Positions 1,635 through 41,104 of a DNA stretch of 64,000 nucleotides are shown piece after piece (position 1 is the first letter of the stretch; every line of letters starts with the position of its first letter). Position numbers and translations under genes: made by a program. The notes under the pieces are model-generated. The model saw only the letters and a program-made list of their open reading frames with translations. It was not told the DNA's origin and made no database searches. Source of the stretch: Takakia lepidozioides (taxonomy: Eukaryota > Plantae > Bryophyta); the NCBI GenBank assembly GCA_030704615.1, contig CM060733.1, positions 53,010,001 through 53,074,000 on the forward strand. Reading direction: 5' to 3'.

Positions 1635-1969
1635 CCAAGGGCAAAAAGGAATGAATGTGGCTACTACCGGGCCTCGCCCTAGTGACTGACTAGGGGCCAT
1701 AATGCGCCCTAGGGGGCGCGTTCTCTAGTACAAAAAGGAATGAATGTGGCTAGTAGGCGCCCGCCTGTTAAGGACTGTGCTTTTTCTGTTGTTATTTTCC
1801 CTTTACGCCAATAAAACTCTCCATAAATCCATATATAACTTATCTGATATATAGGAGTGATCCTCATTAGCAGATCATTTATCCTATATATCAGTTAAAT
1901 TATTATTTAATTAATAAACATTTAGTTTCTATGATATGTCTTTTGGATCTGCGGATTTTATTATGTAGA

Positions 1970-2235
1970 GAGAGACTTTGCATCAAGTTGAAGTCAACGG
2001 AGAACATGTGGTCAAAGGACCTTACACCGTGTCAATGCACCGATTGGTGTGTTGTGCTGAGTCATGCCCCTCTCTCACCTTCCTCTTATGTTCTGCCAAA
2101 GCAAGAGAGCCAATCGCAGTTTTAGGCTTGTTTTATTGGCTCTATCCCTTCAGGGCAGAGACTTTGCATCATGTTGAAGTCAATGGAGAAAATGTGGTCA
2201 ACGGACCTTACACCGTGTCACGAATATGATTGGTC
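1970..2235 (+). repeat. Two copies of an unidentified dispersed repeat (third copy inverted at 29079-29226)
   Basis: GAGACTTTGCATCA..GTGGTCAA(A/C)GGACCTTACACCGTGTCA occurs at ~1972 and ~2158; a reverse-complement copy lies at ~29079-29226. Confidence 0.85.
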
Positions 2236-4831: not shown

Positions 4832-7800
4832 ATGTCAGGAACAAAGCACTCCATAGGTGAGAACAGAAGCTTGAAGGAGCTTCAAACTATGCCATGTGGA
4901 AGTTCAGGATACAAAGTATCCTTGAACGCGAGGATCTTTGGGAAATAGTACAACCGGAGGAAGACACTAGCTCCGCCAACACTAGCTCCGTCTCTGAGCT
5001 CTTGCCCGATCCTAGAGATGTTGATCATGTTCTTAGAAAGCAAAGGATGAAGGCTTTCTCTATCATCAAGCTATCGGTGAAAGACCATATTGTACCTTTC
5101 ATACTACATGCCAAAGGACCAAGGGAGTGCTGGGATATTTTGAAGTGGCAGTTTGAAGTCAAGAACAACGCCAAGAGGTTGGCAATCCGAAATCGTTTCT
5201 CAAACCTATGAAAGGAGAAAGGCATGACTGTCGCTGACTTCATGAGGCAAGTACAAGACACACTCAACCAACTCAGTGAGTTTGGTGAACTGCCATCTGA
5301 GAGCATCATCGTGGAGCAGATAATCAATGCCTTGCCAGCTAGTTTCAACAGCTTCATCAGGGCTATCTCGAGCAAAAAAAGAACTCCCAACCATCCAAGA
5401 AATAGCTGGAAGGCTCCAACTTGAAGAGAGCCGCAATGCAAATCGAACTCGAGCCCAAGACGAGGAGGCCCTAGTTCTCAAGTTTCGAAGGATCCTCAAG
5501 CAATGGAGAAACGATCGAGTTGAAAACAGGAGGTTCAACTCTGATGTCGGACAATTTGGCTCACAAACTAAACCTGGCTACTGCAACAAATGCGGAAAGA
5601 AAGGACATTGGGCAAGGGAATGTCCAGGTATTGGGAGTTCCTTCTCCGATAAAACTTCTTCCTTTGAGAGGAACAAAGGAAAACAAATTAATGTCATTTG
5701 TGATGACAGTGAAGGTGAGCCCGAGATTGACGATTCAGAGACTGCCAATGAAGTGTTGGAGGCGGCACTTGCAGCAGTGGCTTTAGAAACAGATGATACA
5801 TCATGGATCTTAGATTCAGGGGCCTCAAGGCACGTGACTGGAAACTCACAACTTCTAGATCACATAAAACAGCCAACAGAGCCATCTAATGTTAAAACTG
5901 CCGGTGGGCAATCGCACGCTGTGCGCGGCAAGGGTGATGTAAAAATTTGTTTCCCGAGTGGAGAAATAAAAAAGATCAGCGATGTTCTTTACGTGCCAGG
6001 CCTCACAAAGAACCTGTTATCAATAGGTACTTTGACATATGCTAATCTCGTAGCAATATTTGACTCTGAGAAGTGTTTGCTGGTGACTAAGAATACGCCT
6101 CCTGAAATTGTGGCTAGAGGTATAAGAGATAATGCAACGGGACTATACCGTCTTCACATTCAGCCTGCCAATGTTGAGTTGCATGTGGTCGAAAATCTCG
6201 ATGAGGTTTTCCTATGGCACAAGAAGATTGGGCACCTTAATCTTCAAAGTCTTTTTCACTTGAGCAACAAGGACGTTGCAACAGGGTTGCCAAAACTCCC
6301 GCTGATATCTAGTGTATGTGAAGGCTGCCAGTATGGAAACACCAGAGGGAGAGCTTCCCCAAGAAAAGTCTCAACCGAGCAACACAGGTACTTGAACTCA
6401 TACATACAGATCTTTGTGGCCCCTTGTCACCTTCGTTGAGAGGGGCTCGATACTTTATCACATTCACAAATGACTATTCGAGAAAAACGCGGATTTATTT
6501 CTTGAGACTGAAAAGTGAGGCATTACAGAAATTCAAGTTTTTCAAAGCTCAAGTTGAAAATCAGACAGGGCATAGAATCAAAATTCTACGATCTGATCGA
6601 GGGGGTGAGTATCTTTCAAATGACTTCATCAAATTTTGCAATGAAGAAGGCATACGGAGACAGCTCACTCAAGCTCACACGCCGCAACAAAACGGTGTTG
6701 CTGAACGTAAGAACTGTACTTTGCTTGATAGAGCACGCAGCATGGCTCTTACTTGCAACTTACCCAAGTTCTTGTGGAGTGAGGCAATTAACACGGCAAA
6801 TTACCTGGTGAATCGATCACAAGGCCAACGGTATCAATCCGGAGGAAAAATATTCAGGTATCAAACCAGATCTTTCACTCCTCCGTATTTTTGGTTGCAA
6901 GGTTTTTGTTCACATAGCCAAGGAAGACGTGGCATCTAAGTTATCTCCAAGGTCATTGAAATGTCTGTTTGTGGGATATAATGAGGAGACCAAGGGTTTC
7001 AGATGCTTTAGTCCTCAAGGCAGAAAGGTGGTCATCACAAGGGATGTTCACTTTGATGAATCGAGCATGTCTAGCCTTCCGACATCCTCATCTCCACCTC
7101 CCTTAAGTGCTTTCAGATCCAAGTCCAATCATAAATGACAATTTGCAACCATGTCATCTACCCACTGTACTTGTTCCTGACCAAGCTTGCATTTCTCCCA
7201 TCAAAGCTACACCTATTGATCCTTCAACTCAAAGTGTCTTGGAGTCATGTCATTCATCACCTTTAGGTATTGAGGTGCCCACGACTTCGACAGAACCACT
7301 CACACCAGAGTGGAGTCCAGACCAAAGGGTTGAAAATTCAGACGATGATAGAGATCTTGCAGGTGCACATGAGCAGCCGAGAGCAGGTATAAATTCCCCA
7401 CTGGCTATTCGTAAGTCTGGAAGAACGATCATCTGGCCCATTCAATTCGATGACTACGTAGCAATTGCAGAAGCTGGTGAGCCATAAAAATATTCTGAGG
7501 CAATTGGAAATCCGAAATGGCAAGCTACGATGGATCAAGAAATGGCCTCAATCAAAAGAAACTCCACGTGGGACTTAGTGGATTTACCGCCACAAAAACA
7601 TCCAATCACGGCAAAGTGGGTTTATAAAATCAAGGAAGGAGTTGACGGCAAAGGTGATACATTCAAGGCTCGTCTTGTGGCTCGAGGGTTCAAACAAAGA
7701 GAAGGCATAGATTACGATGAGACCTTTGCACCCGTTGTCAAGTGGGGCACCTTACGAACACTTGTAGCCCTAGCAGCTCAACATGATTGGAAGATGTACC

Positions 7801-9025
7801 AACTAGATATCAAGACGGCATTTCTTAATGGGGATCTTAAAGAAGAAGTCTTCATGACTCAACCTGAGGGGTTCATTGCCACTGGGAAGGAGAATAAGGT
7901 GTGCAGGTTGAACAAAGCCCTCTATGGGCTGAAGCAAGCTCCACGGGCCTGGTAAAAATCGACAACTACCTCCAAGAACAAGGTATGCACAGAAGCAATG
8001 CTGACTACAATATGTACTATGTCAATGAAAGTGAGAAACTTGTCATTCTTGTGCTATATGTTGACGACCTGTTGATAACAGGAAATGATAGTGTCCAAAT
8101 TGAGTGGATCAAAGATCAATTACAGCAGAGATTCGAAATGACAAACTTGGGGGAAATGTCTCATTACTTGAGAATAGAATTTTTGTATCTCAGGGAGGGC
8201 ATCTTCATGACACAGCGTGGGTACATCACCAAAATGCTCGAACAATTTGGGCTTTCAGATTGCAACCCAAAACCGACTCCAATGCTCGAAGGGACAAAAC
8301 TTATCATTAACATGGGTGATGAGCTTGCAGATGCTACTATATATCGGCAAATGGTTGGTAAGCTCATATATCTTACCAACACGAGACCTGACATCTCCTA
8401 CTCTGTGGGTGTCGTTAGCCGCTTCATGAATAACCCGCAAGCACCTCATATGGAAGCAGTTAAGCACATTTTCAGATACTTGAAGGGGACAATTGAACTT
8501 GGGGTTCTCTTCAAGAAACAAGGAACCAGCGAGATCACAGGATTCACCGACGCGGACTGGGCAGGTGACCAGGAAAATAGAAGATCCACTACGGGGTAAG
8601 TATTTCAACTGGGAGGTAGTCCTGTAACGTGGTGCTCTAAACGTCAACCCACAGTGGCTCTCAACTCTACAGAGGCCGAGTACCGAGCCCTAGCCGAAGG
8701 GACAAAGGAATCGATTTGGTTGCAGCACCTATCCAACGAGTTAGGTATCTTCGGAGAAGAACCCATACAAATCTGGTGTGATAATATGAGTAGCATAAAA
8801 ATTGCAAAGAATCAAATTCTTCATGCACGCACAAAACACATCGAGGTACACTATCATTTTGTGCGAGAGCAAGTACAACAAGGAATGGTGGATCTTGCAC
8901 ATGTATCGACCGGGGACCAAATAGCAGATATACTGACTAAACCTTTGGGGAGAGTGAAATTTGAAGGACTTAGAGAGAAGCTAGGTGTTGTCTCTCTTAG
9001 CAGGCTGAGCACCTCAAGAGAGTAG
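4832..9025 (+). pseudogene. Copia gag-pol polyprotein, multiple frameshifts and stops
   Basis: ORF pieces 4894-5211, 5327-6439, 6424-6939, 7530-7955, 7901-8599 and 8654-9025 in gag-PR-INT-RT-RH order. Confidence 0.93.
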
Positions 9026-9210: not shown

Positions 9211-9470
9211 TGACACAGCCCGTCACAGCCAGTCACAGCCAACACAGCCCGACACAGCCGCCACAGCTTCGCACAGTCCGTCACAGCCAACACAGCCCGA
9301 CACAGCCCGACACAGCCGACACAGCCAGTCATAGCCGCCACAGCTTCGCACAGCTCGACACAGTCCGTCACAGTCCGTCACAGCCAATCACAGCCGACAC
9401 AGCCTGACAAAGCCAGTCACAGCCCGTCACAGCTTCACACAGCCCAACGCAGTTTTGCAGAGTTGTCACA
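9211..9470 (+). repeat. Degenerate ~10-bp CACAGCC-core minisatellite in putative gypsy 5' LTR
   Basis: About 25 units such as ACACAGCCCG / TCACAGCCAG. Confidence 0.9.
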
Positions 9471-9999: not shown

Positions 10000-12083
10000 A
10001 TGACTGATTATACTGAGCGGGCTGAATGCTTAGAGATATCCAACTCTTCTATCTTGGAGTTTCCACCTCGAATAACGAAGGGATGGGTGAGTAAAAGCCG
10101 TTCGACATTTGGCGACCATACTGGGGAACTAAGTCTTGAACAACCAGATGTGACAGGCATCTGCTGGGATCATGGTGGTTGGAGAATTAAAGAATTTGAT
10201 GTGAATCAAATTCCCTGTGAAACTGAGAAGGAAAGATTGTCCAAACAATTTTTTCAGAGGTTCTTGTAATTGCCAGACGGTTGTAAAGAAAACATTCTTA
10301 AGAGAGTGCATGATGTTGACCCTGAGTGGGGTCTGGAGAAAGGGGTGATAAAGATTTATCAGGTGGCCTGTAGAGGAAGAGCACGTTGGTTACCAACACT
10401 GGTTTATGTGATAGCATTACTATCCATTAAGCGAGTAGAGTTTGAAGGCTGGGAGGAAAAGAAGGTGAATGTTTATACTCATATGCATGAAGAGCTTGTA
10501 CTGGTAAAGAATTGGATTCCAAAGGATATTCTGTGGATCAAACTCACACCAAGAACAGCTTTCCAGACTTGTTTGCTATATGGTTATATGGTAATGGAGA
10601 CTTCTAGTATAGCCAAGGGTGCATTGAAGCTTGAAAGAAACCCAGGCATATACGAGAGATACTACAGAAGAGAGTTCTGGTTATTGCCACATTAAAGAAA
10701 TGAAAGACATGGGACATGGGTGATGAAAGAGAAGCTAGACTCCAGAGATATTCAGCAAAAAGAGAAAGTTATCTGAAAGCTAATTATCCATATCTTTGGG
10801 AAAGAGGAATAGACATAGGGGAATCATCTGGACCTCTCACACCATTAAGATCAGAGAGTACATCACCCATACCGGAAGAACTAGAGTTGGATGTCACTCC
10901 TTCTTTTTCTTTGCAAGAAAGATTAAGGGAATTGGTACGGGAAGAAGATCAACCGTGAGGTGAAAGATCTGAGGTACATCCCTGGATAAAAGATTTGACA
11001 GAAATCTTTGATAAGAGTTGGCATGGAACACCAAAAGTAGGAACTCCAGTTTTTGAAACGGAAGGTGAAGAAAGAGGGGAGGATGTGGCAGAGCCAACGG
11101 AGAGTTCAGACTCTCCAACACCATTGCAGTTGAGTTACATGAGTGAAGGAGAAACCCAAGGGCAGAACTTGGAGGATGAAAACAGAGAGAAGAAATTGGA
11201 AGAGGAAGAGTATGAAGAAGTAGACCCAATAGCTGAGGTTGAGACTACAACCAGAACATCCCAACCCGTTGGACTTGGATCAAGTGGAGCACTTGGATCA
11301 CAAGCCAATGAAGGTGTCGGCTCACGGGGATCAGGCGGGCAGCCTGGATCTGGCTCTGGGGGGACAGGGAGTGTGGGAAGTAGTGCAACTGGAGCTGGGA
11401 ATACTGTGAATATCGTGGGGCCAGTAGCAGGGAGTGTTCAGGGGCCACCACTTGGTGGAAGATCCACCACAACTACAACAGGTCCTCAAGGACCAGCACC
11501 AGCAAGGGGGCCAGCATCTGTCAGTGGGCAGAGGGTAGGGCCACAGATGGCGTTACAACCAACACGGGCAAAACCACATTTTCCAATATATTCAGGAAAA
11601 GGGGATCCCGATGTACACATTAGCCAATTTGAGTACATGTGTATTGTGAACAATGAGAATGACGAGGATGCCAAGATGAGATTGTTTCCTTGTTCACTTA
11701 TTAAGAAAGCAAGTGAATGGTATGCAAGATTCCCTGATAATCATTTCATAACCTGGAATGGCTTGAATACAGCATTCCGAAATAGGTTCAGGACAAGTAA
11801 AACTGAGGATGAAGTGTATGGAAGTTTACAACAGTTAAAGCAAAAGAAGCATGAAACTGTTGAGGAGTATATGGAAAAAATGGAATTGATGATGAACCAG
11901 CTGGCTGCTGTACCAACACCAGGTTTACAGAAGACTTGGTTTGTGAGTGGACTAAGACCAGAGTTGCAAAAGAAAGTGGATATGTTACCCCATAATACAG
12001 TGGAAGAGGCATTTGAAACAATGAACAGAATTGAGCAATTGGGAATGCTCAGGAGAGAGAAAAGGGATGATGAGGACTCTGAG
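10000..12083 (+). pseudogene. Gypsy gag N-terminal part with long uncharacterised N-terminal extension
   Basis: ORFs 10000-10269/10270-10695 and 10716-10958/10995-12107 are separated by single stops and one frameshift. Retrotransposon-gag motifs FPIYSGKGDP, LFPCSL..ASEWY, TWNGL..AF. Confidence 0.75.
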
Positions 12084-13395
12084 GATGAGTTGACACAGTT
12101 GACCTGACCCATGTTTGAGCTTCATACTTGGGTAGGGAAGCCCTTCAAGGATGACATGCTGTTGATGTTTCATACTCGACTTGATGACATCCTCAAAATA
12201 CGAGAGGTTAGTACTGTGTTACACTAGCATCTAGGAGTAAACCGAAGTCGGGGTTGACTCTCTGTTCAGTCAGATATCATTATGCACACAATAGGTGAGA
12301 ACTCGTTCATGCAGACCTGTTCTTGCTGACCAGAGCTAGGTTTTGCATCAGAAGAGTACATGGTGATATCTGACATGCCCTCATCTTAGTTAGATTGCAG
12401 CGGCTTACGTAGCATGTCCTTTCTTCAGTGCTTGAGCCTTGTTGCTACAAAGGGTGGAAAATCAAAATGAACAATCTGTTACAAACAATGTTAGCGCAGG
12501 TACATGAAAGGCTGCTGATGCTGGTCTCTGCAAATGAGATGCGCTCACTGGCGTAGCGTGTGTTCCAACCTTTCTCTACTGTGAGACCTTTTGAATGCAC
12601 GTCGACTGCTGAGAGTCTGTGGAAGGTTGCTTTCTCCCACCTGTTCACTCTAAGGGCTCATAGTCTTGTTTCAATGGTAACAAGTGGTATTGACTGAAAA
12701 GACTTTCTCATTCTAGTCGATTTAACAAAATATGTAGATCTTTATCTGCTTTCTCAACGAGGTATAGGTGAAACCCTAAAAGCAGATACATGTGCTGAAA
12801 GATGCATGCAAAGGGTTCGATAATTTTGGTTTGGCATTAGAGCAGCATTCTAGGACGCCCAATATTTACAGATAGATTCATGTTGTATGTCTGATGTAGG
12901 CTGCTTTGGTGGAGTATGAGGAAAAGATGCTTCCAATAGAGGGGAAGATAGCCTTAAAACTGCGGGAACTCTTTTGCTCTTCTCTCCTACCTTCCTTTGC
13001 AGCATCTGTCAGAGAAAATGCAAACAACTCTGTTTCAGCTATGGCTCGGCCTCATCAGGTGGCAAACTTCTTTTCTTCTGGTTATAATGCGTTCCTTAGA
13101 CCATCTGGTGTTTGCAAATTTCTCTTTAGCTTTCAGGAATGTCCCAATTGCACTGACTTTATATGCAAAGTTTCCCTCTGTTGGGGAACCTTGGTAAATG
13201 AAGGCTAGTAAGAAGATAAAGAGGTCGGTGTACCCTTGCACAACCACATCTTTTTAAATGGTATGTGTTTTGTTGTGCTGACAGCTGTGTGCAAGTGATG
13301 GGAGAACTGCGCAGGTTTAAAGAGCTCTTTGGAAAACCTCTTGTGGTGCAATGTCTGGCAAGTGAAGGACATAGGCTCCTCTCACTAATTCAAAG
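12084..13395 (+). pseudogene. Captured fragment of cytoplasmic dynein-2 (IFT dynein, DHC1b/DYNC2H1-like) heavy-chain tail; 4 exons with introns
   Basis: Exons ~12084-12206, 12500-12625, 12900-13058 and 13295-13395 join in phase 0 (GT..AG; last acceptor reads AA). They give HTWVGKPF..HTRLDDILKIRE/VHERLL..RVFQPF..ESLWK/AALVEYEEKMLPIEGKIALKLRE..ARPHQ/VMGELRRFKEL, colinear with the DHC1b N-terminal tail as I recall it. Two in-frame stops. Confidence 0.8.
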
Positions 13396-14036
13396 GTGAT
13401 TGGCAGAGAGTCACAATTTTTTGTTGTTGTTTGATGCCCTTTGTTGTTCTTTGTCCGTCTCCTGTAGAGGAAATCAAAGTCGCAAGCTCCTCAATCAGAA
13501 GCATTCCTACTTTGTGTTGTGTGAAGGAGGAACCATGGAATCATTGATATGCACCAGTGTCAGCATGCAGGCATGTTGAGGCTCTGAGGAGTACATTTGA
13601 AGAGAAGTGTGTTGTGTTCAGCACCCATAATAGAAAGAATGAATTTGATGTGGCCTTGCCCCATTTCCATGCGGGGATAGTTGTTGGAAGTAGTAGAGTC
13701 GTCCCTATTTTTTCATGTTGAATTCTGCAAGTTAGCTCGTTGGTGGATCTATGGTGGTTTTGGAGTGATTTTGTGCTCCCTGTACCTTCTTCTTCAACCT
13801 ATTTCAGTCTGTTTTGCCCTCTCATCATTAGGGTTTAGGGTGTTTGCTGGAAGAACTTCATGCCATCAGTGTCAGCTGCTAGTAGCAAGGCTGAGGATGT
13901 ATTCATGATTTGTCCACAGGCAGGGATAGCTGAGGACCAGGGATAGAGGTCCAGATTCATCCAAGAGGGCCGGATCCAAACTACAAACAGGAAAGGCAGA
14001 CCAGGGAAAAGCTGCAGAGGAGCAACCAAAGGCACT

Positions 14037-14625
14037 TGGTATTTGGGTAGGGTTCAAAGAATGCGGAAGAAAATCAATAAGCGGTTTGTAGAATGTAGGG
14101 ATTCTGTTGATTTATTGGAGCGTCATTCTCATATGGAGATTGGGTTAGCATGGTACCAAAAAATTCGAGGAGGGGTCTATACGTACGATTTGACGGATAA
14201 CATGATGGTTGATTTGGATTCCATTATCGCGTTAGCATGTTTAAAGTACAATGTCAAGTCAAACACATATGTACTTGATGCAAATGACCGAAAAGTCTTT
14301 GACAACTTTATCAAAGGCAAATAATTTTTTAATTAATTTGTTAGATTTTATTATGTTTAAATGAATAAATTCGATATAATATAAAAACATACATATACAT
14401 ATTGGAGGGTTATTTTTAATGATGGAAAATGAGAATATACATACATAAGGGGGTACTTTTTAAAAATTATAAATTTTTGTATATTTACAGGAGGGGGTTT
14501 TATAATCTTCAAAAAGTATGTACATAGGGGGTATAAATTATCCAAGGACCCGTATACAGGGGGTTTTTTTATTAGGCGATGAACGCACGTGATACGCACA
14601 GTTTATAAAGAGTGCCCCCCCCAGG
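14037..14625 (+). mobile_element. Right end of a putative DNA transposon: ORF C-terminus, AT-rich subterminal region, terminal GAGTGCCCCCCCCAGG
   Basis: ORF (WYL)GRVQRMRKK...DNFIKGK* ends at 14324, followed by repeated AGGGGG(T) motifs in AT-rich DNA. Gypsy gag resumes right after 14625. Superfamily not assigned. Confidence 0.55.
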
Positions 14626-14763
14626 TTAGGACCACTATGGTAGGCCTGGTGGTTATAACAATGGCATGGAAGGGAGAGGTAATCCAAGAGGAAATTACCA
14701 AGGAAATTCTAGGGGCAACTATCAGGGTAATCCAAGGGGGAATTACCAGCCAGGGAATCAGGA

Positions 14764-15490
14764 TGTCGCGCACCTCACTTCGGTAAGCTCCCCCTCAAGT
14801 CATAGTTACTCGCTTTGATGCGCGCGCCTGACTCCCAACCTGGCCGCCGGGCCAACTTGGAGCTTCGGCTGCTCACCGGGGCATAACGGTCCCCCTTTGT
14901 TCTCCCAAAGAACCCTCCACCGATTTGGAACCAGCGGGAATTCCCTTTGGTAGTTGGCAGTCCGGAACAGCTCCCCACTCTTTGGTCGCTTTCCGGCTCG
15001 CTCGCTTACTCACTAGTTTTTGGTCACCAACGGGCTTGCACCGTTCTCGAGGTTACTACTCCCTATATATACTTTTGTAGCTGTCCGCGGGGGTTTCACA
15101 ACCAGCCATGCCATTTTATGGCGAACCACCACGAAAACCCTCGACTCCCGGTGATGAGACGCGGTGAGTCTTGGCCCACTCACCACGGCCCCTATGGACC
15201 GTGATGAGTCCCAAGACTCCCCACGACTCCCACCACGAGGTCTCCGCCCCCATGGTGAGTCCTATGCCACCCCCACTAAGTCCCGCTAAGCTACCACTAC
15301 CCCTTGTGGAGCCACCCCCACCGCAACCCGGTGTGCGGGGCTCCACCTAGTGAGCGCCTCCGCTTCCCTGAGTGCCTTGGGCACTCAAAGGTGCTTCAGC
15401 CCCCCATACCTATCGCTGCCGCTGCCCCCACCACAGGGGCAGCCCCTCATGTGTCCCGACCCCCTGCCCTCAATGCAAAGGGCCGCGACA
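14764..15490 (-). repeat. Chromovirus 3' LTR (727 bp)
   Basis: About 8 substitutions and 2 single-base indels relative to 21021-21747 by manual comparison. Confidence 0.95.
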
Positions 15491-16411
15491 CACACCCCTA
15501 CCAACAGGAAGTCGATGTCCTCATCGACTTGTCTATGTTGTAGAAACGAACATCCAAGTTGTGGCGTCCCACATCAAGGAGTTTGTTTCCGTACCATGGC
15601 GTCCCATGGCAAAGAACCAAACCCCACATTTGACTCTACTCTCCACTAGCTAGTTCGGCCGACTTCCTCCAAGTCCCGGCCAAGGGTGGAGCCTCTCAAG
15701 CTCCTCCCAGTGCACTCTTCTTGGCCTTCTTCAAGGTCAAGGAACGATCCTCCCCGAGGATCGAATCGCCTTACTGCAACAACATTGCTTGCGACCGCTC
15801 ATGATGCCGCTTTTGGCATCACCTTGGGCAAGGGTTCACCTGGAACCCTCTTTGACTAGGAAGATAACCTTAAACCAACCGTGCGCCCAATCACTACAAT
15901 TGGGTCCGCCTTGGAATGCTGGCCTGAGGTACGGGAACACGTCGAAGCCGCACTACGACTTCGTCCCGAGGCTACACGATTATAGTACGTGAACGGAAGC
16001 ACGTAGCTTCCGCGTTAGCCCGCACTACAAGGCAACCCCCTCGGTAGCGCAGTTATAGTATGCGCACGCGCCAGGTGCGCACTAGCACGTGAACTCCCAA
16101 AGAAGGCGCAAGTTTCTTGCCCCTTGGATGGGGGTCACCCGATTTCGGCACTACGCAAACACACGATTAACCCAATTTACCTCTCCCACTTTTATAAGCT
16201 AGCATGCATTCTACACACTAGCCAACCATACCATGCATCACCATTCCAAACAAAATAGGACGCACAACATTTGGAAGCCATTTCATTTATAGCACGTTTT
16301 GTACAATACAAGTTTTTGCAATCGGATTCCTAAGCTAGCTAAGCCGGGCTAAGCATGCATTTCTGCTAAGCATGCATTTCTTCCCCCACGCTCCAAGGGT
16401 TGATGTCCCCA

Positions 16412-19400
16412 TCAACGCTTCTTTCGCTTTTGAGGTCGCCCTTCGAAAGCTGCAACCGCTTCGGATGCGTTTCCCATTTCTGAGGCACGCACCCAAGATG
16501 CCTCCACATGATGATAGCCCTTCCATTTGACGAGATACTCCGTTTCTCGGTTCTTGAACCACCTCGACTTAAGTATTGCCTCCACCTCGTACTCAGGTTC
16601 ATTTTCATGATCCAACAGCATAGGTGGCGGACGCAACATTTGATGCCGATTCGGACGCGCTTCATCTTTGAAGTAAGGCTTCAAAAGGGAGACATGGAAT
16701 ACCGGGTGCACCTTGCTGTTTGTCGGCAGCTCCAATTCGTACACATCCTCATTCATAACCTTCCGAATGCGAAAGGGTCCCGCATACGGAGGTACGAACT
16801 TCGGACTCACTTTCGGAGGTAGTCAAAAATTCTTGATGTTCAACCAGACCTTCGTGCCTGCCTCAAACTTCACTTCCCTCCGCTTCCGATTCGCCTGCCT
16901 TTCATACCATTTCCTAGCTTTGGCAATGTTGTATTTTGCGAGCTTCAACAAACGCTCACGTTCTTCTAGTACCGCCGTTACTCCCGGTTCCTCAACGTCC
17001 TGGGCGGCCCAACTTGTCGGCACCAGAGGTGCTTTTCCATAGACCAATACGAAATGGGAAACTCCCGTTGCGGAGTGTTCTGTGTTATTATAACAGAACC
17101 GTATCTAAGTGTTCCACCCAGTCTGTTTGGTCTGCCGACACGTAATTCCGCAAGATCTGCTTCACTACGGAATTCACTATTTCTGTTTGGCCGTCGGTCG
17201 TAGGTCGGAAGGCGGTGCTCATCTTCAGCCTCGTCCCCATCTTCTTCCAAAGTGCCCTCCAAAATTTACTCGTAAACTTTGGATCGCGGTCCGAGACAAT
17301 ATCCCTCGGGACTCCATGATGTTTTAAGACATGGGCGAAGTAAAGTCGCCCTGTTTCCTGCGCCATAGCCGTCTCCTTGGTGGGGATGAAATGACCCATT
17401 TTACTGAACCTATCCACCACCACCATGATTGCATCGAATCCTTTTGACAGCGGCATAGCAATCATGAAATCCATCGAGACGCTTTCCCAAGTCCCCTCTG
17501 GAATCGGCAAGGGTTGTAACAGCCCCGCTTGCTTTTTGTACTCGCTCCGGTTTTGTTGGCATGTGGTGCATGTCTTGACATACTCCTCTGCCTCCTCCCT
17601 CAGTTTGGGCCAGAAATACTCTTTCTTCAAGAGTGCCGCATTGCGCTTGGCTCCGTCGTGGCCCGCAAGCGGGCTATCATGACATTCTCTCAAGAGGCTA
17701 TCTCTGATCCCTCCCTTCGGCATGTAGAGACATTTTTGCTTATACCGGAGCAGTCCATTTTGCAAGTGGAACTGCGATTTAACCCCCATCCTCAAGTCCT
17801 GCATCACGGACTTCGCCAGCTCATCCTTCCGGCACCTTTCGGATCTTCCTTTGGAGCGCCGTCTCGCATTTGTACACCAACAAGAGCTGCTGCTTTCTAT
17901 TTAAAGCATCGGCTACCACGTTGTCTCGTCCCGGTTTGTACTGGATATCCACGTCGAACACCGCCAAAGTATCTTGCCACCTAAGCTGTTTTGGGGACAA
18001 CTTGGGCTGTATGGCAAAATACTTCACCGTGACATTGTCCGTGAACACCTTCACTGGGTTGGAACCAACATAGTGGCGCCAAAGCTCAAGACAGTGCACC
18101 ACCGCCTTCATCTCTTTCTCGTGCGTCGGCCACCATCGCTCGACTTCATTCAGTTTCTTACTTTCGTAAGCCACTGGACGTCCATCTTGCATCAGTACAC
18201 CCCCAATTGCGAAGTCCGACGCATCTGTATGTATCTCGAACGGACGATCGAACTCTGGGATTTTCAAGACTGGAGCTTCCGCCATCCGCTGCTTCAATTC
18301 AGCAAAAGCTTGGCCACAAAAGGTGTTCCATGCCCAGACTTTAGATTTACACAGAAGGTCTGACAGCGGACCCGCGATTTTGGCGAAATTTCTCACATAC
18401 TTCCGGTAATAGGAGGCGAGTCTTAGGAAGGATCGCACTCCCGGGACCGAAGTCGGAGGCTCCCAGTCCAAAATTGCCCTCACCTTTCTGTCATCCATTT
18501 TGATCCCATCCTGTGTAATCACATGCCCCAAGAACTCCACTTTCGTGACCCCGAATTTGCACTTTGAAGCTTTGGCGTACAGCTTCCCTTCCTGCAACTT
18601 TTGGAACACCCTTTTGAGGTGCTCCAGGTGCTCCTCCTTTGTTTTCGAGTACACCAAGATGTCGTCGATGTACACGATCACAAAGTCATCCAACCACTCC
18701 TGAAAAAGGCTGTTCATCAGCGTGCTAAAGGTCGCAGGTGCATTGGTGAGCCCAAAAGGCATCACCAAGAACTCATATGAACCATACCTTGTCCTGCACG
18801 CGGTCTTCTCCTCATCTCCTTCCGCCACCCGAATTTGATGATAGCCGGAGCGCAAGTCGATCCGGCTGAAATACTTCGCTCCTGCCAACTGGTCGAAAAG
18901 GTCGTCGATCCTTGGCAAAGGGTACCGGTTTTTAATAGTCACCTTATTCAAAGCCCTGTAATCGACACACATCCGCAGCGTTCCATCCTTCTTGTCTGCG
19001 AATAGCACCGGGGCTCCGTAAGGTGACTTACTCGGCCGGATGTACCCCTTTGACATTAGATCCTTGAGCTGAGTCTTCAGCTCGACCAACTCCCTGTGGC
19101 TCAACCAGTAGGGTGCCTTGGCAGGCGGTTCCGATCCCGGTATCACCTCAATCTTGTGGTCAACTCCTCTTCGCGGTGGCAAGCCGCTTGGTAAATCCTC
19201 CAGCATCACATCCTGGTATTTCTCCAAAATCCTCTTGATCCAATCTGGGCTCGGCTCCCCATCGCCTTCTCCTTTCACTTCTCTAATGTAAAGCAAAAAC
19301 TGGGGCTCGTGTGCCTCCTCCACGGCCCACTCCCTTGCTGACAGAAGGTTTATTCGCCCTCCCACGGATTTGGGCGTTTCCGACACTCGTAAGCCTCGCC

Positions 19401-20966
19401 ACCATTCCCACATGGCAGCGTGACTACTCTCTTGCGGCCATCTATGACCACCCCGGATTTGCTCAAAAAGGTCATCCCCAAAATGAGATCCACTCCATCG
19501 ATCTCGCAGATGGTGAAGTTCTCACGTCCCTCCCAACTCCCCAGTTGAAGAGGAACATCAAACGCCAACCTTGTCGCCATCTGTGCTTCTCCTTTGGCAG
19601 AACGCACCTCAATAGAGGCCCCCACGTCACTTGTCGGGAGTCCCAACTTTCGCGCCGCCGCCGGCGTCATGAAGGAGTGCGACGCTCCTATGTCCACCAA
19701 CAACGACACGTTAGTTCCGGATATTATCCCATCCACGAACAATAACTGACTCCCTTTACGCAGGGCGCCAGTTTCCTGATACAACTCACAAGAATAGTTG
19801 CCTACCTTGCAAGTCCTGGCGACCACCGCTTCCACCAAGCGACTGATGGTATCTTCCGACAGCTCCGTGGTTGCCCGAGTCATGTTCAATTGTCAAGGTT
19901 TCGTGCACTTCTTGGCCATGTGCCCGGGCTCCCCGCAATTGAAACACACTCCATCAAAGGTCGCCTTCTGTCCGCCATAAGCCGCTCCACCCGCTTTTCC
20001 TTTTGAAGCACCGGGTGCCGCCTTGACGTGTGAAGGCCCTCCCTTCGATTTCCACGTGCCATTGTCGCCGCGTGGCCTATCCCACTTCTTTTCTGGTCGG
20101 AAGGAATCACCTTCCCGCCGGGTCTTCTTGTGGTTCAGCTCCGTACGGCCTTGTCTCTCACCCCTAGGGACATCCGAGAAACATTCAGCCCTCTCAATTG
20201 CCTCGTTCAAAGTCTTGGGTGGCTTCTCCTCCAACTTCCGCCTGGCCCATGGGGCCAGTCCCGCCACAAAGTTGAAGACCATTTTGGTTCTGCCATGTCC
20301 GCGACTTTGAGCAACAGCACATTGAAAGCCTGGACATACCCCCGAATGTCATCTGTTTGCTTCAAATTCCTCATCTTGTCTCGGGCAAGCCAGGACGCGT
20401 TGAGAGGCACAAATTGTCTCTTCATCAATTCCTTGAACCCACTCCAGTTCAAGGTTTCCGGGCTTGGACCTCGGTCGTGAAGGCGTTTCTGCCACCATTG
20501 TTGAGCATAGCCCCTCAAATAGGTGGGAGCCACTTCCACCCGATCCTCGTCACTCAACTTGGCCGCCCGGAAGTACTGCTCTAGCTCCAAGAGCCAGGTG
20601 TTGAGTGCCTTCCGATTTCGGACGCCCTCGAAGGTGCCGGGTTCCTTAGGCTTCACCTTAAACTTTGCCTTAGCGGAAGTGGCATTAGCCGCCTTCAACA
20701 CGTCTTTCAACGTCCCGCCAAACTGCGCCAACAACCCTTCCCAAAAAGCTACCGGCATGGAAGGCATCTGTTGGTCTGTCAGAGCTCTCAGGGATTCCTC
20801 GGGCTCCGACTCCTCGGATTCCTCCCGCTCTTGAGCGGCCTCGTTTTCAGAAACCTGCGTCGCTTCCTCAAATGGCCGCTTCGGTGACACGTCGCCCTCA
20901 TCGGGCTCACCAGGATCATCATGTTTTGGGCCGTTCCGCTTTTGCTTTGGCTTGCCCAACCCCATG
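16412..20966 (-). pseudogene. Chromovirus gag-pol with chromodomain, several frameshifts
   Basis: Gag 20207-21019 and 19893-20282 (CFNCGEPGHMAKKC), PR (VDIGASH), RT/RH 17821-19413, INT 17088-17807, GPF motif and chromodomain YEVEAIL..YLVKWKGY..SW in 16412-16810. Confidence 0.93.
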
Positions 20967-21006
20967 ATGAGGCCAATCCCAAGGATGATCGCGTACTGAA
21001 CTCTAA

Positions 21007-21018
21007 GCTCTGATATCA
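21007..21018 (-). promoter_or_regulatory. Primer-binding site (tRNA-iMet type) of chromovirus
   Basis: Minus strand TGATATCAGAGC, 2 bp from the 5' LTR, one mismatch to TGGTATCAGAGC. Confidence 0.85.
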
Positions 21019-21020
21019 AG

Positions 21021-21747
21021 TGTCGCGCACCTCACTTCGGTAAGCTCCCCTCAAGTCATAGTTACTCGCTTTTGATGCGCGCGCCTGACTCCCAACCTGG
21101 CCGCCGGGCCAACTTGGAGCTTTGGCTGCTCACCGGGGCATAACGGTCCCCCTTTGTTCTCCCAAAGAACCCTCCACCGATTTGGAACCAGCGGGAATTC
21201 CCTTTGGTAGTTGGCAGTCCGGAACAGCTCCCCACTCTTTGGTCGCTTTCCGGCTCGCTCGCTTACTCACTAGTTTTTGGTCACCAACGGGTTTGCACCG
21301 TTCTCGGGGTTACTACTCCCTATATATACTTTTGTAGCTGTCCGCGGGGGTTTCACAACCAGCCATGCCATTTTATGGCGAACCACCACGAAAACCCTCG
21401 ACTCCCGGTGATGAGTCGCGGTGAGTCTTGGCCCACTCACCACGGCCCCTATGGACCGTGATGAGTCCCAAGACTCCCCACGACTCCCACCACGAGGTCT
21501 CCGCCCCCATGGTGAGTCCTATGCCACCCCCACTAAGTCCCGCTAAGCTACCACCACCCCTTGTGGAGCCACCCCCACCGCAACCCGGTGTGCGGGGCTC
21601 CACCTAGTGAGCGCCTCCGCTTCCTTGAGTGCCTTGGGCACTCAAGGGTGCTTCAGCCCCCCATACCTATCGCTGCCGCTGCCCCCACCACAGGGGCAGC
21701 CCCTCATGTGTCCCGACCCCCTGCCCTCAAGGCAAAGGGCCGCGACA
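21021..21747 (-). repeat. Chromovirus 5' LTR (727 bp)
   Basis: Near-identical to 14764-15490 and adjacent to the PBS. Confidence 0.95.
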
Positions 21748-21752
21748 CAGGA

Positions 21753-24700: not shown

Positions 24701-26583
24701 TCAGTGCCCACCTAGTTATGGTAAGGAGCAGAGGAAGAGAATTGCTATCAAGGCTTTACCTTATACTATGGTAGGGAGCAGAATGTATAAGCTAGGACCT
24801 GATGGAGTACTTAAACAATGTTTGTACCACCATGAAGTAAAGAAAGTTTTGGAGGAAGTTCATAAAGGAGTGGCTGGAGGACATTTTGGAGAAGAGACTA
24901 TCAGTAGGAAGATACTACTTGCAGGTTACTGGTGGCCTACTTTGTTCAAGGATGTACACAAGTATTGTCAAAGTTGTGATGAATATCAGAGGCTAGGACC
25001 TTTGCAGAGATCTGGGAAGATGGCTTTGCATCCTACGATGCCTACTGAACCATTTCAGAAATGGGGACTAGACTTTGTTGGACCAATTAACCCACCGGCC
25101 AAGAATACACAGAACAAGTATATAATTACAGCCACTGATTATACTACGAAGTGGGTGGAAGCTAAAGCTCTGAGGGACAACACAGCCAAGTCCACATCAA
25201 GGTTCCTGTATGAGAACACGATTTGGCTGTCATTTGGAATTTATCAGTGACCAGGGAAGTCACTTCATTAATGAGACCATTAAACTATTGACTAAAGAAT
25301 TCATGATTGTGCATATGAAGAGTACAACGTATTACCCACAGGGTAATGGGCAGGCAGAGGCTACCAACAAGATACTATGTACTATCTTGGCTAAGATAGT
25401 CCATGCAAACAGAACGGATTGGGATACAAAGCTGTTGACAGCTTTGTGGTCATACATGACTTCATATAAAGTCATCACTAAGTATACACCATTCCAATTA
25501 GTTTATGGTATGGAAGCTTTACTTCCAGTGGAATTCTTGTTACCTACCATGAGAATGGAATGGGGAAAGAGAATGGAATTGGAAGATTCAATTAAGGTCA
25601 GGAAACATGAATTATACCATGTGGAAGAAGTACGTGTTGATGCAGCTGATAACATGACCAGAATTCAGATGAAGAGGAAGGAACAGTTTGATGAAGGCAA
25701 ATTAAAGACTTCTAAGACGGGAGATTTGGTTCTCTGGTTGCAAAAGAAGGGGAAGATTAAAGCTTCTAAGCTTAAATCACCATGGAAGGGACCTTATGTC
25801 ATACAGAAGATGTATGATAACAACACAACCATGTTACAAACCATTAACAAAGAGATGCTTGGAAGAGTCAATGCCAATAAGTTGAAGGGATACAGTGGTA
25901 TCCATGACAAACCATTGCAGCACGATTTGCATGTTGAAACACAAAAGCAGTCACGGGCTGCGCCAGTGATACCAACGGAGTATGAAGCACTTGTCGCTAA
26001 GCCGAGCATATATGACCAGGGCGGGAACTACAGGTGTTTGCATACCTATCACAGCCCATCACAACGTAACACAGCCTATCACAGCCCATCACAACGTGAC
26101 ACAGCCTATCACAGCCCATCACAGCGTGACACAGCCTATCACAGCCCATCACAGTGTCACACAACCTATCATAGCCCATCACAGTGCCACACAGCCTATC
26201 ACAGCTCAACACAGCCTACCGGGGTTACACAGTTCATAGGATCAGTGACAGATGGACGTGGGTTAACATCCGGAGAGTGGCCGGCGGAAAAGTGGACGGA
26301 GGCAGGTTTAGAAATGGACACGTGGACGCCAGGGCGAGACACACAGCCGGACATGAATTGCAAGAACGGGTGTCATCATGAAGGAAGACAAAATTGGCCG
26401 TCAAAGTACCTACCCGGCACGTTAACCGAAATTTATTGTGGGCCCATTAATGCATACAGGGAAAGGGTAACGGAACCCTTTACAAGTACCGAAAAGCGAA
26501 ATCCTTGTCACATGTGCTATCCTAGTGGACAATCCAGGGGGGGAAATCCACGGAAGGGAATTAAATTACAAAACCAATCATAG
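21753..26583 (+). pseudogene. Gypsy gag zinc knuckle-PR-RT-RH-INT remainder, with stops and frameshifts
   Basis: ORFs ending at 22752, 22762-24207, 24370-24570, 24558-25250 and 25210-26583. Confidence 0.92.
26041..26220 (+). repeat. 30-bp tandem repeat x~6 (three 10-bp ACAGCC subunits), in frame with the integrase C-terminus
   Basis: ACAGCCTATC-ACAGCCCATC-ACA(A/G)(C/T)GT.AC units; translate as TAYHSPSQRD-like repeats. Confidence 0.95.
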
Positions 26584-28873: not shown

Positions 28874-29078
28874 AGTTCATAGGCATGCCCTGAATAGACA
28901 GATGAATCCGAAGTTGATTGCAATGTGAAGAGAGATTGCTTGAGTCTATATAACAGAAGACAACATGTTAAGGGATGATGAGATTACATATGATTGGGCA
29001 CTGAATGATCCTTCTGTGTCTGAGTCACATTGGTAAGCCAATACCTTGCACCCAATAAGCAACAAGCCTCAAACATCA

Positions 29079-29226
29079 ATGGGCTCTCTTGTTTTAGCAA
29101 AACATAAGAGGAAGGTAAGAACACTGAGCATGACTCAGCACAACACACCAATTGGTGCCTTGACACGGTGTAAGGTCCTTTGACCACATTTTCTCCGTCG
29201 ACTCGAACATGATGCGTAGTCTCTCT
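29079..29226 (-). repeat. Inverted copy of the 1970-2120 repeat
   Basis: Roughly 80-85% identical by eye over ~145 bp. Confidence 0.85.
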
Positions 29227-30669
29227 CCACAAGAGAGCCAACAAATACTCCTGTAACTCCCCCACCATCCTAGGCCCAACCAACAATCTGCAGGCCCAGA
29301 GAGCAAAGAGCCTCGATGAGGTGATGGAAACCTTTGACAGTGTAGCCTCATCACTGCATATGCCTCTCCTCTACACAACATACCTACCCAATTCAAGGCG
29401 ACACTGGAGTCACTAGGATAGGTTTATGCTCATTCACGCTTCCAAAGAAGCTCGTGTTGGGTTATATGTTAGAGCCTCCATTACATACTTCCTTATTTTT
29501 AGTTTTATTTTCTAAAAGGAAACCTGGGAGCGACTGCTCACAATTCAGGCTTTCTCTTTGCGAAAGGCATAAGCATCTTGGTTCCACATTCTTAACAGTT
29601 TCCAATATATTACGAGTAAAGTTTCCGACCCCACATTCTTCCTGTAGTAGTTAAAGGGGCATGCCACATTCATAAATTGTCCAATGCTGGCAAGCTCTCC
29701 CTCAATTGAATTGCATGAGGAGAGAGGGTGGTCTACTAATTAGATGAGGCGAGTATTAAAGTATGAGATGAATGGGAAGATGCTCAGCACAATGTTGGCA
29801 AACCCAGTCCTACCGAGAACTCTACCAAACTCCACACACTGCAAGGCAGCTGTTGGGCCGTTACAAACTTGGAATTGATGACTGACAAGCTCTCATTCAA
29901 AAGAGGACAACTCCCGTTGGAAGGACAACCCAACTCACGGAAGGGTAAGTAGTACTTGGTGAAATCAAACAAAAACAAAACAGCAACCCAGGTAGATCTT
30001 GCAGAAAATGGGTCAGGAAATGGATTTGGTGGGGTTTATCATCATCCTTTCAGAAAAGGTTGATGGAGTTGTGTACCCACATAAGCACATGATCATAAAG
30101 TATAATAAAAATTCAAAGCTGAGAAAGTGGGGAGGCATGAGCAATGAAGGGGGGGAGACGCGGGCAAGTGATGCTCCCGAGGCCAGCCACCCTTCAAGGT
30201 CGGAGGGACATGTCAGCCGCAGCCGAGATTTGTGGCCTCGGCGCGCATGGATTCCAGCGCTTACATAGGTGTCAACCCACATTCACAAAATGAGAACTTG
30301 CTGTGAAAGCTCAGATCCTATACTGTACAGAATAGTTGGCAGATTTGGAGGAGCGGGGGAAGCTCAGATCTTGGCCGCTTGCCCAGAATAGTTATGAGTT
30401 TGAAGCAGTCTCTGCTTATATTAGTCAGAGTATGCTGGATCCACCCTGTAGGCTCTCACTGTCCCGTGCAGACTGGCAGAAACACACATCTCCAATCCGC
30501 GTAGTCAAGTTGCTTAGGCTGGAGGTCACCTTGGAGTGTAGTAGTGCACCAGCTCCTCCCTGCACGCCCGGCCTGCAGCTCTTCACTTGTTAAAACTCGC
30601 TAGTTCATTTTTGTGCATGGAGTGTTTTTGAATGTCACGCTGTTGGGTTTCTCTCTCGTGTGGTTTGCG

Positions 30670-40823: not shown

Positions 40824-41104
40824 GTATCACCCTATATTGCCCTTTCTCTATAACTATACTCCTCTCGTGCAAGATCCTTGACGTAGAGCTTAAACAGTGA
40901 TGTCACTCGGTACACGGCCAACTAATCTGGTGAAAGGAGTGAGAGGGAGTTCAATTTCTCTAGGTAGTCTGCCATGAGAACAAAGAGAGAGGAAATTGGG
41001 AGGGAGCTAACTCACAATTTACCAGATCCATGTCGTATCATTGCACCATAATACAACATGCTGTCATGACATGAATGATGAATCGGGGATGCCCGATGAA
41101 TCCC

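What the first reader, a model, noticed from the sequence alone, without database searches (positions are those of the whole stretch)
12084..14625. Gene-capturing (Pack-type) insert carrying intron-containing IFT dynein exons, hidden inside a gypsy gag
Seen: gypsy gag stops at ~12083 and resumes at ~14626. Between them lie four spliceable exons, a second host-like segment, and a short ORF remnant with an AT-rich subterminal region ending GAGTGCCCCCCCCAGG. Knowledge: the exon translation follows the dynein-2 (DHC1b) tail, and retained introns imply DNA-level capture rather than retroposition. Inference: this is the right part of a mosaic non-autonomous DNA transposon that shuffles host gene pieces. 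Its terminus does not look like a typical MULE, CACTA or Helitron end, so it may be an undescribed Pack-element family.
Basis: partly seen in the sequence, partly recalled or inferred. Interest (0 to 1): 0.85.

Follow-up and report, generated by a model that had tools for sequence, protein, structure and literature searches.

The report
One-ended transposon remnant carrying dynein exons
A 2.5-kb patchwork of DNA sits inside a retrotransposon's gag gene in a land-plant genome: a broken piece of the flagellar transport dynein gene with its introns, a scrap of a second gene, and one end of a cut-and-paste transposon; it is an ordinary, probably immobile by-product of transposon activity, not a proven new gene-shuffling family.

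Summary
A Ty3/gypsy gag (10995-12086) is interrupted, and its frame resumes at 14630.

The insert (12087 to about 14629) has three pieces:
- **A, 12087-13684:** a dynein-2 heavy-chain fragment. It has five exons, not four, and four retained introns. Both ends are cut mid-exon. It carries two in-frame stops and a lost splice acceptor.
- **B, about 13690-13978:** related to a stretch upstream of a PPR gene 22 kb away in the same window.
- **C, 13983-14629:** the last ~113 codons of a multicopy protein family with no Pfam match, then an AT-rich tail with a significant cluster of GGGGGT motifs, ending ...GAGTGCCCCCCCCAGGTTAG.

DNA-level capture is supported. The Pack-type reading is only partly supported:
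- Dynein homology starts directly at the gag junction, so there is no left terminus.
- No target-site duplication is visible.

My best reading, at about 0.55, is a one-ended, immobile remnant of a cargo-carrying DNA transposon, or an excised copy captured by end joining. The transposon superfamily is unresolved.

Earlier notes of this scan describe Pack-CACTA and Pack-Sola elements elsewhere in this genome. This particular stretch was noted only as itself.

The parts
10995..12086 (+). 5' part of the outer Ty3/gypsy gag, up to the insert
   Evidence: Pfam Retrotrans_gag 2.9e-14 and Ty3_capsid 5.7e-07. The open frame runs 7 codons into the dynein piece and stops at TGA 12105-12107.
12087..13684 (+). 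Piece A: dynein-2 (IFT dynein) heavy-chain gene fragment with five exons and four introns, cut mid-exon at both ends and pseudogenised
   Evidence: Collinear exon-only homology to L002. Exon 3 leads to P0005/P0006, which hit DYNC2H1 6rla_A. A downstream ORF of L002 hits DYNC2H1 at 1e-9.
12087..12206 (+). Dynein exon 1' (partial; its 5' part is missing); in-frame TGA at 12105 where L002 has TGG; GT donor at 12207
12500..12625 (+). Dynein exon 2, with in-frame TAG at 12554-12556 and a one-codon deletion relative to L002
12900..13058 (+). Dynein exon 3 (53 codons, intact)
   Evidence: phmmer hits P0003 6e-13, P0005 3e-06, P0006 2e-04; tblastn 1e-21 to L002
13295..13395 (+). Dynein exon 4; the acceptor reads CAA (13292-13294) where L002 has CAG
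13571..13684 (+). Dynein exon 5' (partial; homology stops mid-exon, whereas L002 continues for 12 more codons)
13690..13978 (+). Piece B: fragment related to window 36145-35732 (minus strand), a stretch upstream of PPR ORFs that encodes a PDF-motif-like peptide; the middle part of that copy is missing here
   Evidence: blastn E 7e-28 and 8e-15, 80-84% identity; alignment A1; PPR Pfam hits for the neighbouring ORF
13983..14324 (+). Piece C, coding part: last ~113 codons plus stop of a protein family with no Pfam match (relatives P0001, P0007-P0010); starts mid-ORF
   Evidence: tblastn 1.5e-30 to L001; profile search E 9e-48 to 3e-22; alignments A2 and A3
14325..14629 (+). Piece C, non-coding part: AT-rich tail (GC 27-28%) with five direct copies of a YAnAGGGGGT-type motif (14400-14572) and the end GAGTGCCCCCCCCAGG (14610-14625) plus TTAG
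   Evidence: cluster P about 5e-8 locally, about 3e-5 window-wide; unique in the window
14630..14763 (+). gag resumes (Gly/Asn/Arg-rich linker), then is cut again by the nested LTR element
   Evidence: it continues at 21755 into a CCHC knuckle

Best explanation
The 2.54-kb insert is a DNA-level mosaic lodged in the gag of a Ty3/gypsy element. It consists of the right-hand terminal ~640 bp of an unclassified cut-and-paste DNA transposon, joined to two fragments of host-type genes. The transposon part has a truncated last exon, an AT-rich tail with a G-rich subterminal motif array, and a terminus. The gene fragments are 1.6 kb of the dynein-2 heavy-chain gene with its introns, and about 290 bp of a PDF/PPR-locus-type sequence.

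It most likely descends from a cargo-carrying (Pack-like) non-autonomous transposon, or a precursor of one. It lost its left end either by aberrant excision or because an excised, partly resected copy was captured into a break by end joining. With only one end it cannot move by itself and has no function; the dynein piece is dead.

Shown: the three pieces and their identities, the mid-exon and mid-ORF breakpoints, the absence of a left terminus, and the motif array. Inferred: that the right end is a true transposon terminus, that the pieces were joined inside a transposon before arrival, and how the left end was lost.
For: - Dynein fragment with four retained introns and arbitrary mid-exon ends, which indicates DNA-level origin.
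- Piece C belongs to a sparse protein family that is multicopy within one sample: three paralogues in assembly ERZ28573529, and decayed copies in L001 and L005. That pattern is typical of transposon genes.
- Piece C starts mid-ORF, as in internally deleted elements.
- A significant cluster of direct G-rich motifs lies within the last 230 bp, 55-65 bp from the boundary, like transposase-binding subterminal repeats.
- The insert ends abruptly where the gag frame resumes.
- One-ended, immobilised derivatives after aberrant excision are documented for Pack-CACTA, and 2151 partial Pack-MULEs are listed in rice (PMC6379663).
- Earlier notes of this scan report Pack-type elements with PPR and PDF cargo across this genome. 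These are leads only.
Against: - No other copy of piece C or its terminus was found in the window. The genome could not be searched, so the terminus is not proven to be a natural, shared end.
- No left terminus and no convincing TSD. The best candidates are a 5-nt AGGAC match 9 nt off the junction and a 4-of-6 match in codon register, both compatible with chance in an acidic GAG/GAT/GAC run.
- The protein family has no recognisable transposase domain, and its fold prediction failed (pLDDT 39), so 'transposon gene' is an inference.
- All three pieces lie in sense orientation relative to gag, which a random DNA patchwork would give only 1 time in 8.
Confidence: 0.55

Rival explanations
1. Pure break-repair filler. 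A double-strand break in gag was repaired by end joining or synthesis-dependent copying, which stitched in three unrelated genomic snippets. The third snippet merely happens to come from a transposon or from a gene's 3' end. No transposon ever inserted here, and the right boundary is an arbitrary breakpoint.
For: - No TSD and no left terminus.
- All internal junctions are tight, with 4-10 unassigned nucleotides (13685-13689, 13979-13982), as in patchwork filler.
- Possible microhomologies at both outer junctions: GAG at 12087-12089 and AG at 14628-14629, if the gag read GAG-GAC there. This follows from reading.
- The gag frame is kept across the insert without visible loss or duplication.
Against: A random breakpoint would not be expected to fall 55-65 bp beyond a subterminal motif array at the end of an AT-rich tail. 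A 2.5-kb filler is large for plant end joining (general knowledge). The four nucleotides TTAG after CCAGG could equally be donor flank.
Confidence: 0.25
2. This is a complete or near-complete member of an undescribed, mobile Pack-type family whose ends are unconventional, so the left junction at 12084-12087 is a real element end.
For: Cargo of host fragments next to a transposon-like end. The terminus is unlike boundary CACTA or Helitron ends. Pack-type elements are common in this genome according to earlier notes.
Against: The first base after gag is already dynein sequence, collinear with the orthologous exon. Nothing at the left resembles the inverse of the right end. No TSD. The CTG(6-8)C motifs at 32869 and 37104 show no similarity beyond the G run.
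Confidence: 0.07
3. Capture by the retrotransposon itself. Reverse transcriptase switched templates from gypsy RNA to co-packaged cellular RNAs, building the mosaic into this gypsy copy before integration.
For: All three pieces are in sense orientation and collinear with gag. The dynein exon is in the same reading frame as gag. Abnormal template switching is a known capture route for LTR elements (PMC13317346).
Against: Four dynein introns, and what appears to be intron sequence (inferred from a GTAAGT donor-like site in the related copy), in piece B are retained. That would require wholly unspliced RNAs from two genes. Piece C ends without a poly(A) trace.
Confidence: 0.06

Closest known systems
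Terminal-deletion (one-ended) derivatives of Pack-TYPE transposons, such as Pack-CACTA1a aberrant-excision products and partial Pack-MULEs (Catoni et al. 2019, PMC6379663)
   Same: Host gene fragments lie next to a single surviving transposon end. The derivative is immobile. It sits inside another sequence, and it arose at DNA level.
   Different: In the documented cases the surviving end keeps its TSD and belongs to a family with known TIRs. Here the family, the TIR and the TSD are all undetermined, and no sibling copy has been seen.
Pack-TYPE transposons proper: Pack-MULE, Pack-CACTA, Pack-hAT, Pack-PIF (Gisby & Catoni 2022, PMC8903248)
   Same: Intron-bearing fragments of several genes are merged in one block beside transposon terminal sequence.
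   Different: Two TIRs and a TSD define the class. Only one candidate end is present here, and no TSD.
Fractured Ac (fAc)-type one-ended elements, and filler DNA at plant double-strand-break repair sites (recalled from general knowledge, not checked here)
   Same: A single transposon end is joined to unrelated DNA, and the junctions are patchwork with short unassigned stretches.
   Different: Those cases were defined experimentally at known donor loci. Here the donor loci are unknown.
Dynein-2 heavy chain (DYNC2H1 / DHC1b), N-terminal tail
   Same: Piece A aligns collinearly with a dynein-2 gene (L002). Through P0005 and P0006 it maps to residues 563-650 of the SNAP-tagged 6rla_A DYNC2H1 construct (construct numbering).
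   Different: It covers only about 206 codons of a roughly 4300-residue protein. It has two stops, a lost acceptor and truncated end exons, so it is a dead fragment and not the gene.

Membership tests
Pack-TYPE transposon | Fragments of host genes inside the element | tested here: met
   Dynein-2 fragment and the piece B relative of the PPR/PDF locus.
Pack-TYPE transposon | Terminal inverted repeats at both ends (PMC8903248) | tested here: not met
   Dynein homology begins at 12087, directly after gag. No inverse of the right end occurs near the left junction or elsewhere in the window.
Pack-TYPE transposon | Target-site duplication flanking the element | tested here: inconclusive
   No exact duplication abuts the junctions. 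The only near matches (AGGAC 9 nt off the junction; GAGGAT versus TAGGAC) are within chance for this low-complexity acidic run (reading).
Pack-TYPE transposon | Belongs to a cluster of related copies, with singletons excluded (packFinder criterion, PMC8903248) | not testable with these tools
CACTA (En/Spm) superfamily | Outermost bases 5'-CACTA/CACTG, with a 3-bp TSD | tested here: not met
   The inverse strand has CACTC at 14614-14610, which is 11-15 nt inside the boundary. The bases between it and the gag frame include an in-frame TAG, so they are unlikely to be gag. No 3-bp TSD.
CACTA (En/Spm) superfamily | Subterminal arrays of short repeated motifs | tested here: met
   Five direct G-rich motifs in 14400-14572. 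This feature is shared with hAT, Mutator and other superfamilies, so it is not diagnostic.
Helitron | 3' end CTRR preceded by a stable hairpin; insertion between A and T; no TSD | tested here: not met
   The end reads ...CCAGGTTAG followed by G. The last 91 nt fold no better than shuffles (z -0.10).
Mutator-like element (MULE) | Long TIRs and a 9-10-bp TSD | tested here: inconclusive
   Only one end is present, so TIR length cannot be measured. No 9-bp duplication was seen.
PIF/Harbinger | TTA/TAA TSD and GG-starting TIRs | tested here: inconclusive
   TTA follows ...CCAGG (14626-14628), but there is no left copy. Read as gag it would create the in-frame TAG. No DDE_Tnp_4 or Myb-like hit.
Dynein-2 heavy chain | Sequence homology to DYNC2H1/DHC1b rather than other dyneins, collinear over several exons | tested here: met
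   P0005 and P0006 match DYNC2H1 at 1e-7 and 4e-5, against 0.1-1 for dynein-1. L003 has a DHC_N1 ORF downstream. The L002 ORF matches DYNC2H1 at 1e-9. Five window exons are collinear with L002. Single exons alone were below detection.
Ty3/gypsy LTR retrotransposon (the host of the insert) | gag, then protease, RT and integrase, in that order on one strand | tested here: met
   Retrotrans_gag and Ty3_capsid; gag-asp_proteas (weak), RVT_1 5e-26 and Integrase_H2C2 6e-13 in order. Its own LTRs were not found.

The most novel reading that the evidence does not exclude
Piece C is the end of an undescribed DNA-transposon family. Its terminus reads CTGGGGGGGGCACTC on the inverse strand, it has G-rich subterminal repeats, and it encodes a conserved C-terminal protein domain with no Pfam family, seen so far in only a handful of plant-like contigs. 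In a bryophyte-type genome where flagellar genes appear to be decaying, this family picks up and shuffles intron-bearing host gene pieces such as dynein-2.
Probability: 0.2. Interest if true: 0.5.

Novelty: new member of a known kind. Interest (0 to 1): 0.3.

Why it matters
If the reading holds, this is one more example of a DNA transposon carrying host gene pieces and leaving a dead, one-ended remnant, this time from a non-seed land plant. That fits the picture from Arabidopsis and rice that aberrant excision leaves many partial Pack elements.

It has no likely effect on the host. The dynein piece is dead and lies inside a retrotransposon.

Two points have modest wider value. First, the protein family of piece C has no annotation anywhere and may mark an unclassified transposon lineage. 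Second, the fragment could serve as a dated snapshot of the genome's IFT-dynein gene, which earlier notes suspect of decaying.

Tried and rejected
- **Single dynein exons against Pfam and PDB:** nothing, even at E 10. Identity had to be shown through intermediates.
- **Representative-library search with exon 3:** the two top hits, P0002 and P0004, are low-complexity repeat proteins and were discarded.
- **gag homologue search to define the empty site:** 92 candidates, none significant. No paralogous gag in the window. The exact junction and the TSD stay open.
- **The look-up of sequencing runs:** I did not resend it, so read laying could not be used.
- **Metagenome scans:** protein pattern and 21-nt terminus both empty.
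- **Findings index by sequence:** empty.
- **Family of the piece C protein:** Pfam gave nothing for L001 ORFs or P0007-P0010. Atlas gave no usable named hit; DUF7869 scored only 0.84. The AlphaFold model had pLDDT 39, so no fold search was made.
- **A second copy of the terminus in the window:** CTG(6-8)C occurs at 32869(+) and 37104(-), bracketing the PPR/PDF locus. CACTCTTTAT occurs at 28228. Neither shows similarity beyond the short motif, so I treat both as chance.
- **Inverted repeat 31683/37154:** it lies inside a coding ORF, so it is chance.
- **Outer gypsy LTRs:** not found; only similar minisatellites.
- **Joined step:** the spliced dynein model was never joined.
- **Human DNA:** no contig was taken for human.
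Full report
**Setting**

The window is repeat-rich plant-type DNA. On the plus strand an open frame 10995-12107 matches Retrotrans_gag (2.9e-14) and Ty3_capsid (5.7e-07).

A gag-like frame, a Gly/Asn/Arg-rich linker, reappears at 14630-14763. It is then cut by a young nested LTR retrotransposon at 14764-21749. That element has 729-bp LTRs at 98.6% identity, a CAGGA target duplication, and a primer-binding site at 21018-21007. After it the frame continues at 21755 into a CCHC knuckle, followed by protease (weak hit), RVT_1 (5e-26) and Integrase_H2C2 (6e-13).

The host of the insert is therefore a Ty3/gypsy element with two later interruptions. Its own LTRs were not found.

**Piece A: the dynein fragment**

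Single exon translations gave nothing in Pfam or among PDB sequences, even at E 10. An exhaustive phmmer search with the 53-codon exon 12900-13058 found three short genomic predictions:
- P0003, 6e-13
- P0005, 3e-06
- P0006, 2e-04

It also found two repeat proteins, which I discarded.

P0005 and P0006 match human dynein-2 heavy chain (6rla_A, positions 563-650 of the tagged construct) at 1e-7 and 4e-5. They match dynein-1 only at 0.1-1. The contig of P0006 carries a DHC_N1 ORF downstream.

P0003 lies on a 7.1-kb Logan contig, L002. A downstream ORF of L002 matches DYNC2H1 positions 801-878 at 1e-9. L002 is therefore a dynein-2 gene from another organism.

The window aligns with L002 in five collinear blocks, exons only, at 73-80% nucleotide and 54-76% amino-acid identity. 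The introns differ in length and do not align.

Refined against L002, the exons are as follows:

| Exon | Coordinates | Notes |
|---|---|---|
| 1' | 12087-12206 | Partial; the orthologous exon extends about 118 nt further upstream |
| 2 | 12500-12625 | In-frame TAG at 12554; one-codon deletion |
| 3 | 12900-13058 | Intact |
| 4 | 13295-13395 | Acceptor reads CAA where L002 has CAG |
| 5' | 13571-13684 | Partial; the orthologous exon continues for 12 more codons |

Splice sites are GT-AG and conserved with L002, apart from the exon 4 acceptor. A further in-frame stop, TGA at 12105, lies where L002 has TGG.

- There are five exons, not four.
- The fragment is cut mid-exon at both ends.
- It is a pseudogene piece.
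- The first part of the 'second host-like segment' is simply the fifth dynein exon.

Four retained introns and arbitrary breakpoints show a DNA-level origin.

The dynein piece happens to be in the gag reading frame, which is why the gag ORF runs seven codons into it.

They were searched one by one by reference, and the joined search was left out.

**Piece B**

Region 13690-13978 matches the minus strand of the same window at 36145-36067 and 35874-35732, at 80-84% identity (E 8e-15 and 7e-28; alignment). About 190 bp of that copy are absent from the insert.

The other copy lies just upstream of PPR-repeat ORFs (PPR_2 at 2e-53). It encodes peptides of the WWDNRGKK and PRGPDFKHK type. From memory these resemble the PDF motif of plant OSB single-strand-DNA-binding proteins; I did not test that.

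Earlier notes of this scan list many Pack-CACTA elements in this genome with PPR and PDF cargo. That is a lead only. A CACTACAAGTAG lies at 32881, next to the 3' end of the PPR ORFs, but I could not find a partner end.

**Piece C**

From about 13983 to the stop at 14322-14324 the frame encodes the last ~113 residues of a protein.
- It is 53% identical over 100 residues to a Logan contig, L001 (tblastn 1.5e-30).
- A profile search found four more relatives, P0007-P0010, at E 1e-44 to 3e-22.
- Three of these come from separate contigs of one ENA assembly.
- L001 appears to carry a frameshift just upstream of this domain.
- L005 carries an in-frame stop.

A family that is sparse overall, multicopy within a sample and partly decayed is what a transposon gene looks like. 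However, no Pfam family, transposase domain or confident fold was obtained, so 'transposon gene' is an inference.

In the relatives the open frame extends far upstream of the point where similarity starts in the window. Piece C is therefore also cut mid-ORF.

After the stop comes a 300-bp tail of 27-28% GC. It holds five direct copies of a motif ending AGGGGGT (one reads GGAGGGT). Four of the 18 plus-strand GGGGGT in the whole window fall within 115 bp here (Poisson about 5e-8 for the spot, about 3e-5 window-wide).

The tail ends GAGTGCCCCCCCCAGG (14610-14625), which is unique in the window, followed by TTAG.

**Boundaries**

*Left.* The last gag codon is GAT (12084-12086), and nucleotide homology to the dynein orthologue starts at 12087. 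There is no room for a transposon terminus, and nothing there resembles the inverse of the right end.

*Right.* The gag frame is a clean codon series from 14630. The codon before it (14627-14629) is TAG, in a gag that otherwise has no stop in more than 400 codons.

This also argues against reading the CACTC at 14614-14610 as a CACTA-type outermost terminus with poly-C as gag.

No exact target duplication abuts the junctions. The near matches are a 5-nt AGGAC lying 9 nt off the left junction, and GAGGAT against TAGGAC in the same codon register. Both are within chance for this acidic GAG/GAT/GAC run.

The end is not Helitron-like. It has no CTRR, and the last 91 nt fold no better than shuffles (z -0.10).

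The superfamily stays open.

**Search for a second copy**

- Two metagenome scans found nothing.
- The findings index by sequence was blank.

Within the window, CTG(6-8)C also occurs at 32869(+) and 37104(-), in inverted orientation around the PPR/PDF locus. Beyond the G run the three sequences are no more alike than shuffles. The subterminal region has no significant match there either. I treat this as chance and record it only as a lead.

**Interpretation**

All internal and outer breakpoints are arbitrary: mid-exon, mid-exon and mid-ORF. Short unassigned stretches lie between the pieces. One side ends in what looks like a natural transposon end.

This is the anatomy expected of an internally rearranged, cargo-bearing DNA transposon that has lost one end. 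Aberrant excisions that delete one terminus and immobilise the rest were seen in real time for Pack-CACTA in Arabidopsis, and 2151 partial Pack-MULEs were listed in rice (PMC6379663). An excised copy resected on one side and ligated into a break would look the same.

My estimates:

| Reading | Confidence |
|---|---|
| One-ended remnant of a cargo-carrying DNA transposon | 0.55 |
| Plain patchwork filler at a repaired break, with piece C just another snippet | 0.25 |
| A complete, mobile Pack element with unconventional ends | 0.07 |
| Capture by reverse-transcriptase template switching | 0.06 |

The filler reading is favoured by the missing TSD and by possible 2-3-nt microhomologies at both outer junctions. 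It is disfavoured by the breakpoint falling just beyond a terminal motif array.

The complete-element reading fails because the left junction is plain dynein exon.

Template switching (PMC13317346) fits the uniform sense orientation of all three pieces. It is contradicted by the four retained introns and the absence of a poly(A) trace.

**Comparison and novelty**

By the published definition, cargo between two TIRs plus a TSD and related copies (PMC8903248), this is not demonstrably a Pack-TYPE element. One feature is met, one is not met, one is inconclusive and one is untestable here.

It works like, and probably derives from, such an element. One-ended remnants of that kind are known. I therefore rate it a new member of a known kind, of modest interest.

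The residual novelty lies in the unannotated protein family and the unclassified terminus.

The scan has described Pack-CACTA and Pack-Sola elements elsewhere in this genome. This stretch itself was noted only as the present finding.

Noticed in passing
window 14764-21749 (minus strand): Young nested Ty3/gypsy chromovirus. It has 729-bp LTRs (14764-15492 and 21021-21749) at 98.6% identity, a CAGGA target duplication, a tRNA-Met-type primer-binding site at 21018-21007, long RT and integrase ORFs, and a chromodomain-like C-terminus in ORF 16412-16810.
   Followed up: partly
window 32881-36150 (minus strand): PLS-type PPR ORFs (33566-35124 plus C-terminal pieces down to 32897), with an upstream PDF-motif-like module (35700-36100). 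The classic CACTA end CACTACAAGTAG lies at 32881, 16 bp from the last ORF. This may be one end of a Pack-CACTA of the kind noted elsewhere in this genome. No partner end was found.
   Followed up: partly
window 12087-13684, and earlier notes s1-474586, s1-481832, s1-488835: The dynein-2 fragment carries two stops and a lost acceptor in about 206 codons. Earlier notes suspect that the genome's own IFT-dynein and other flagellar genes are decaying, so the defects may have been inherited from an already dying parent gene.
   Followed up: no
window 9213-9463 and 26015-26245: Similar 10-bp CACAGCC-type minisatellites lie on both sides of the outer gypsy's coding region. They may be what is left of its LTRs. 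No longer LTR pair aligns.
   Followed up: partly
window 1964-2220 and 29052-29247: An inverted repeat pair of about 180-260 nt at 80-90% identity, 27 kb apart, enclosing the whole copia/gypsy nest.
   Followed up: no
window 37302-39863 and 41100-43181: Two copies, about 80% identical, of a roughly 2.5-kb unit in direct orientation, 3.3-3.8 kb apart.
   Followed up: no
window 5327-9025 (plus strand): Copia-type remnant. It has a 370-codon ORF and an RNase H/integrase-like C-terminal ORF ending at 9025. A CACTACAACAAAA end lies on the minus strand at 4810.
   Followed up: no
window 30613-31842 (plus strand): A 409-codon ORF whose C-terminus reads like a receptor-type protein kinase. It is probably a host gene between the repeat nests.
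   Followed up: no
L001 1410-1480: The relative of piece C on contig L001 has its own pair of 28-nt direct repeats about 200 bp after the stop codon. This suggests that relatives also carry subterminal repeats, of different sequence.
   Followed up: no
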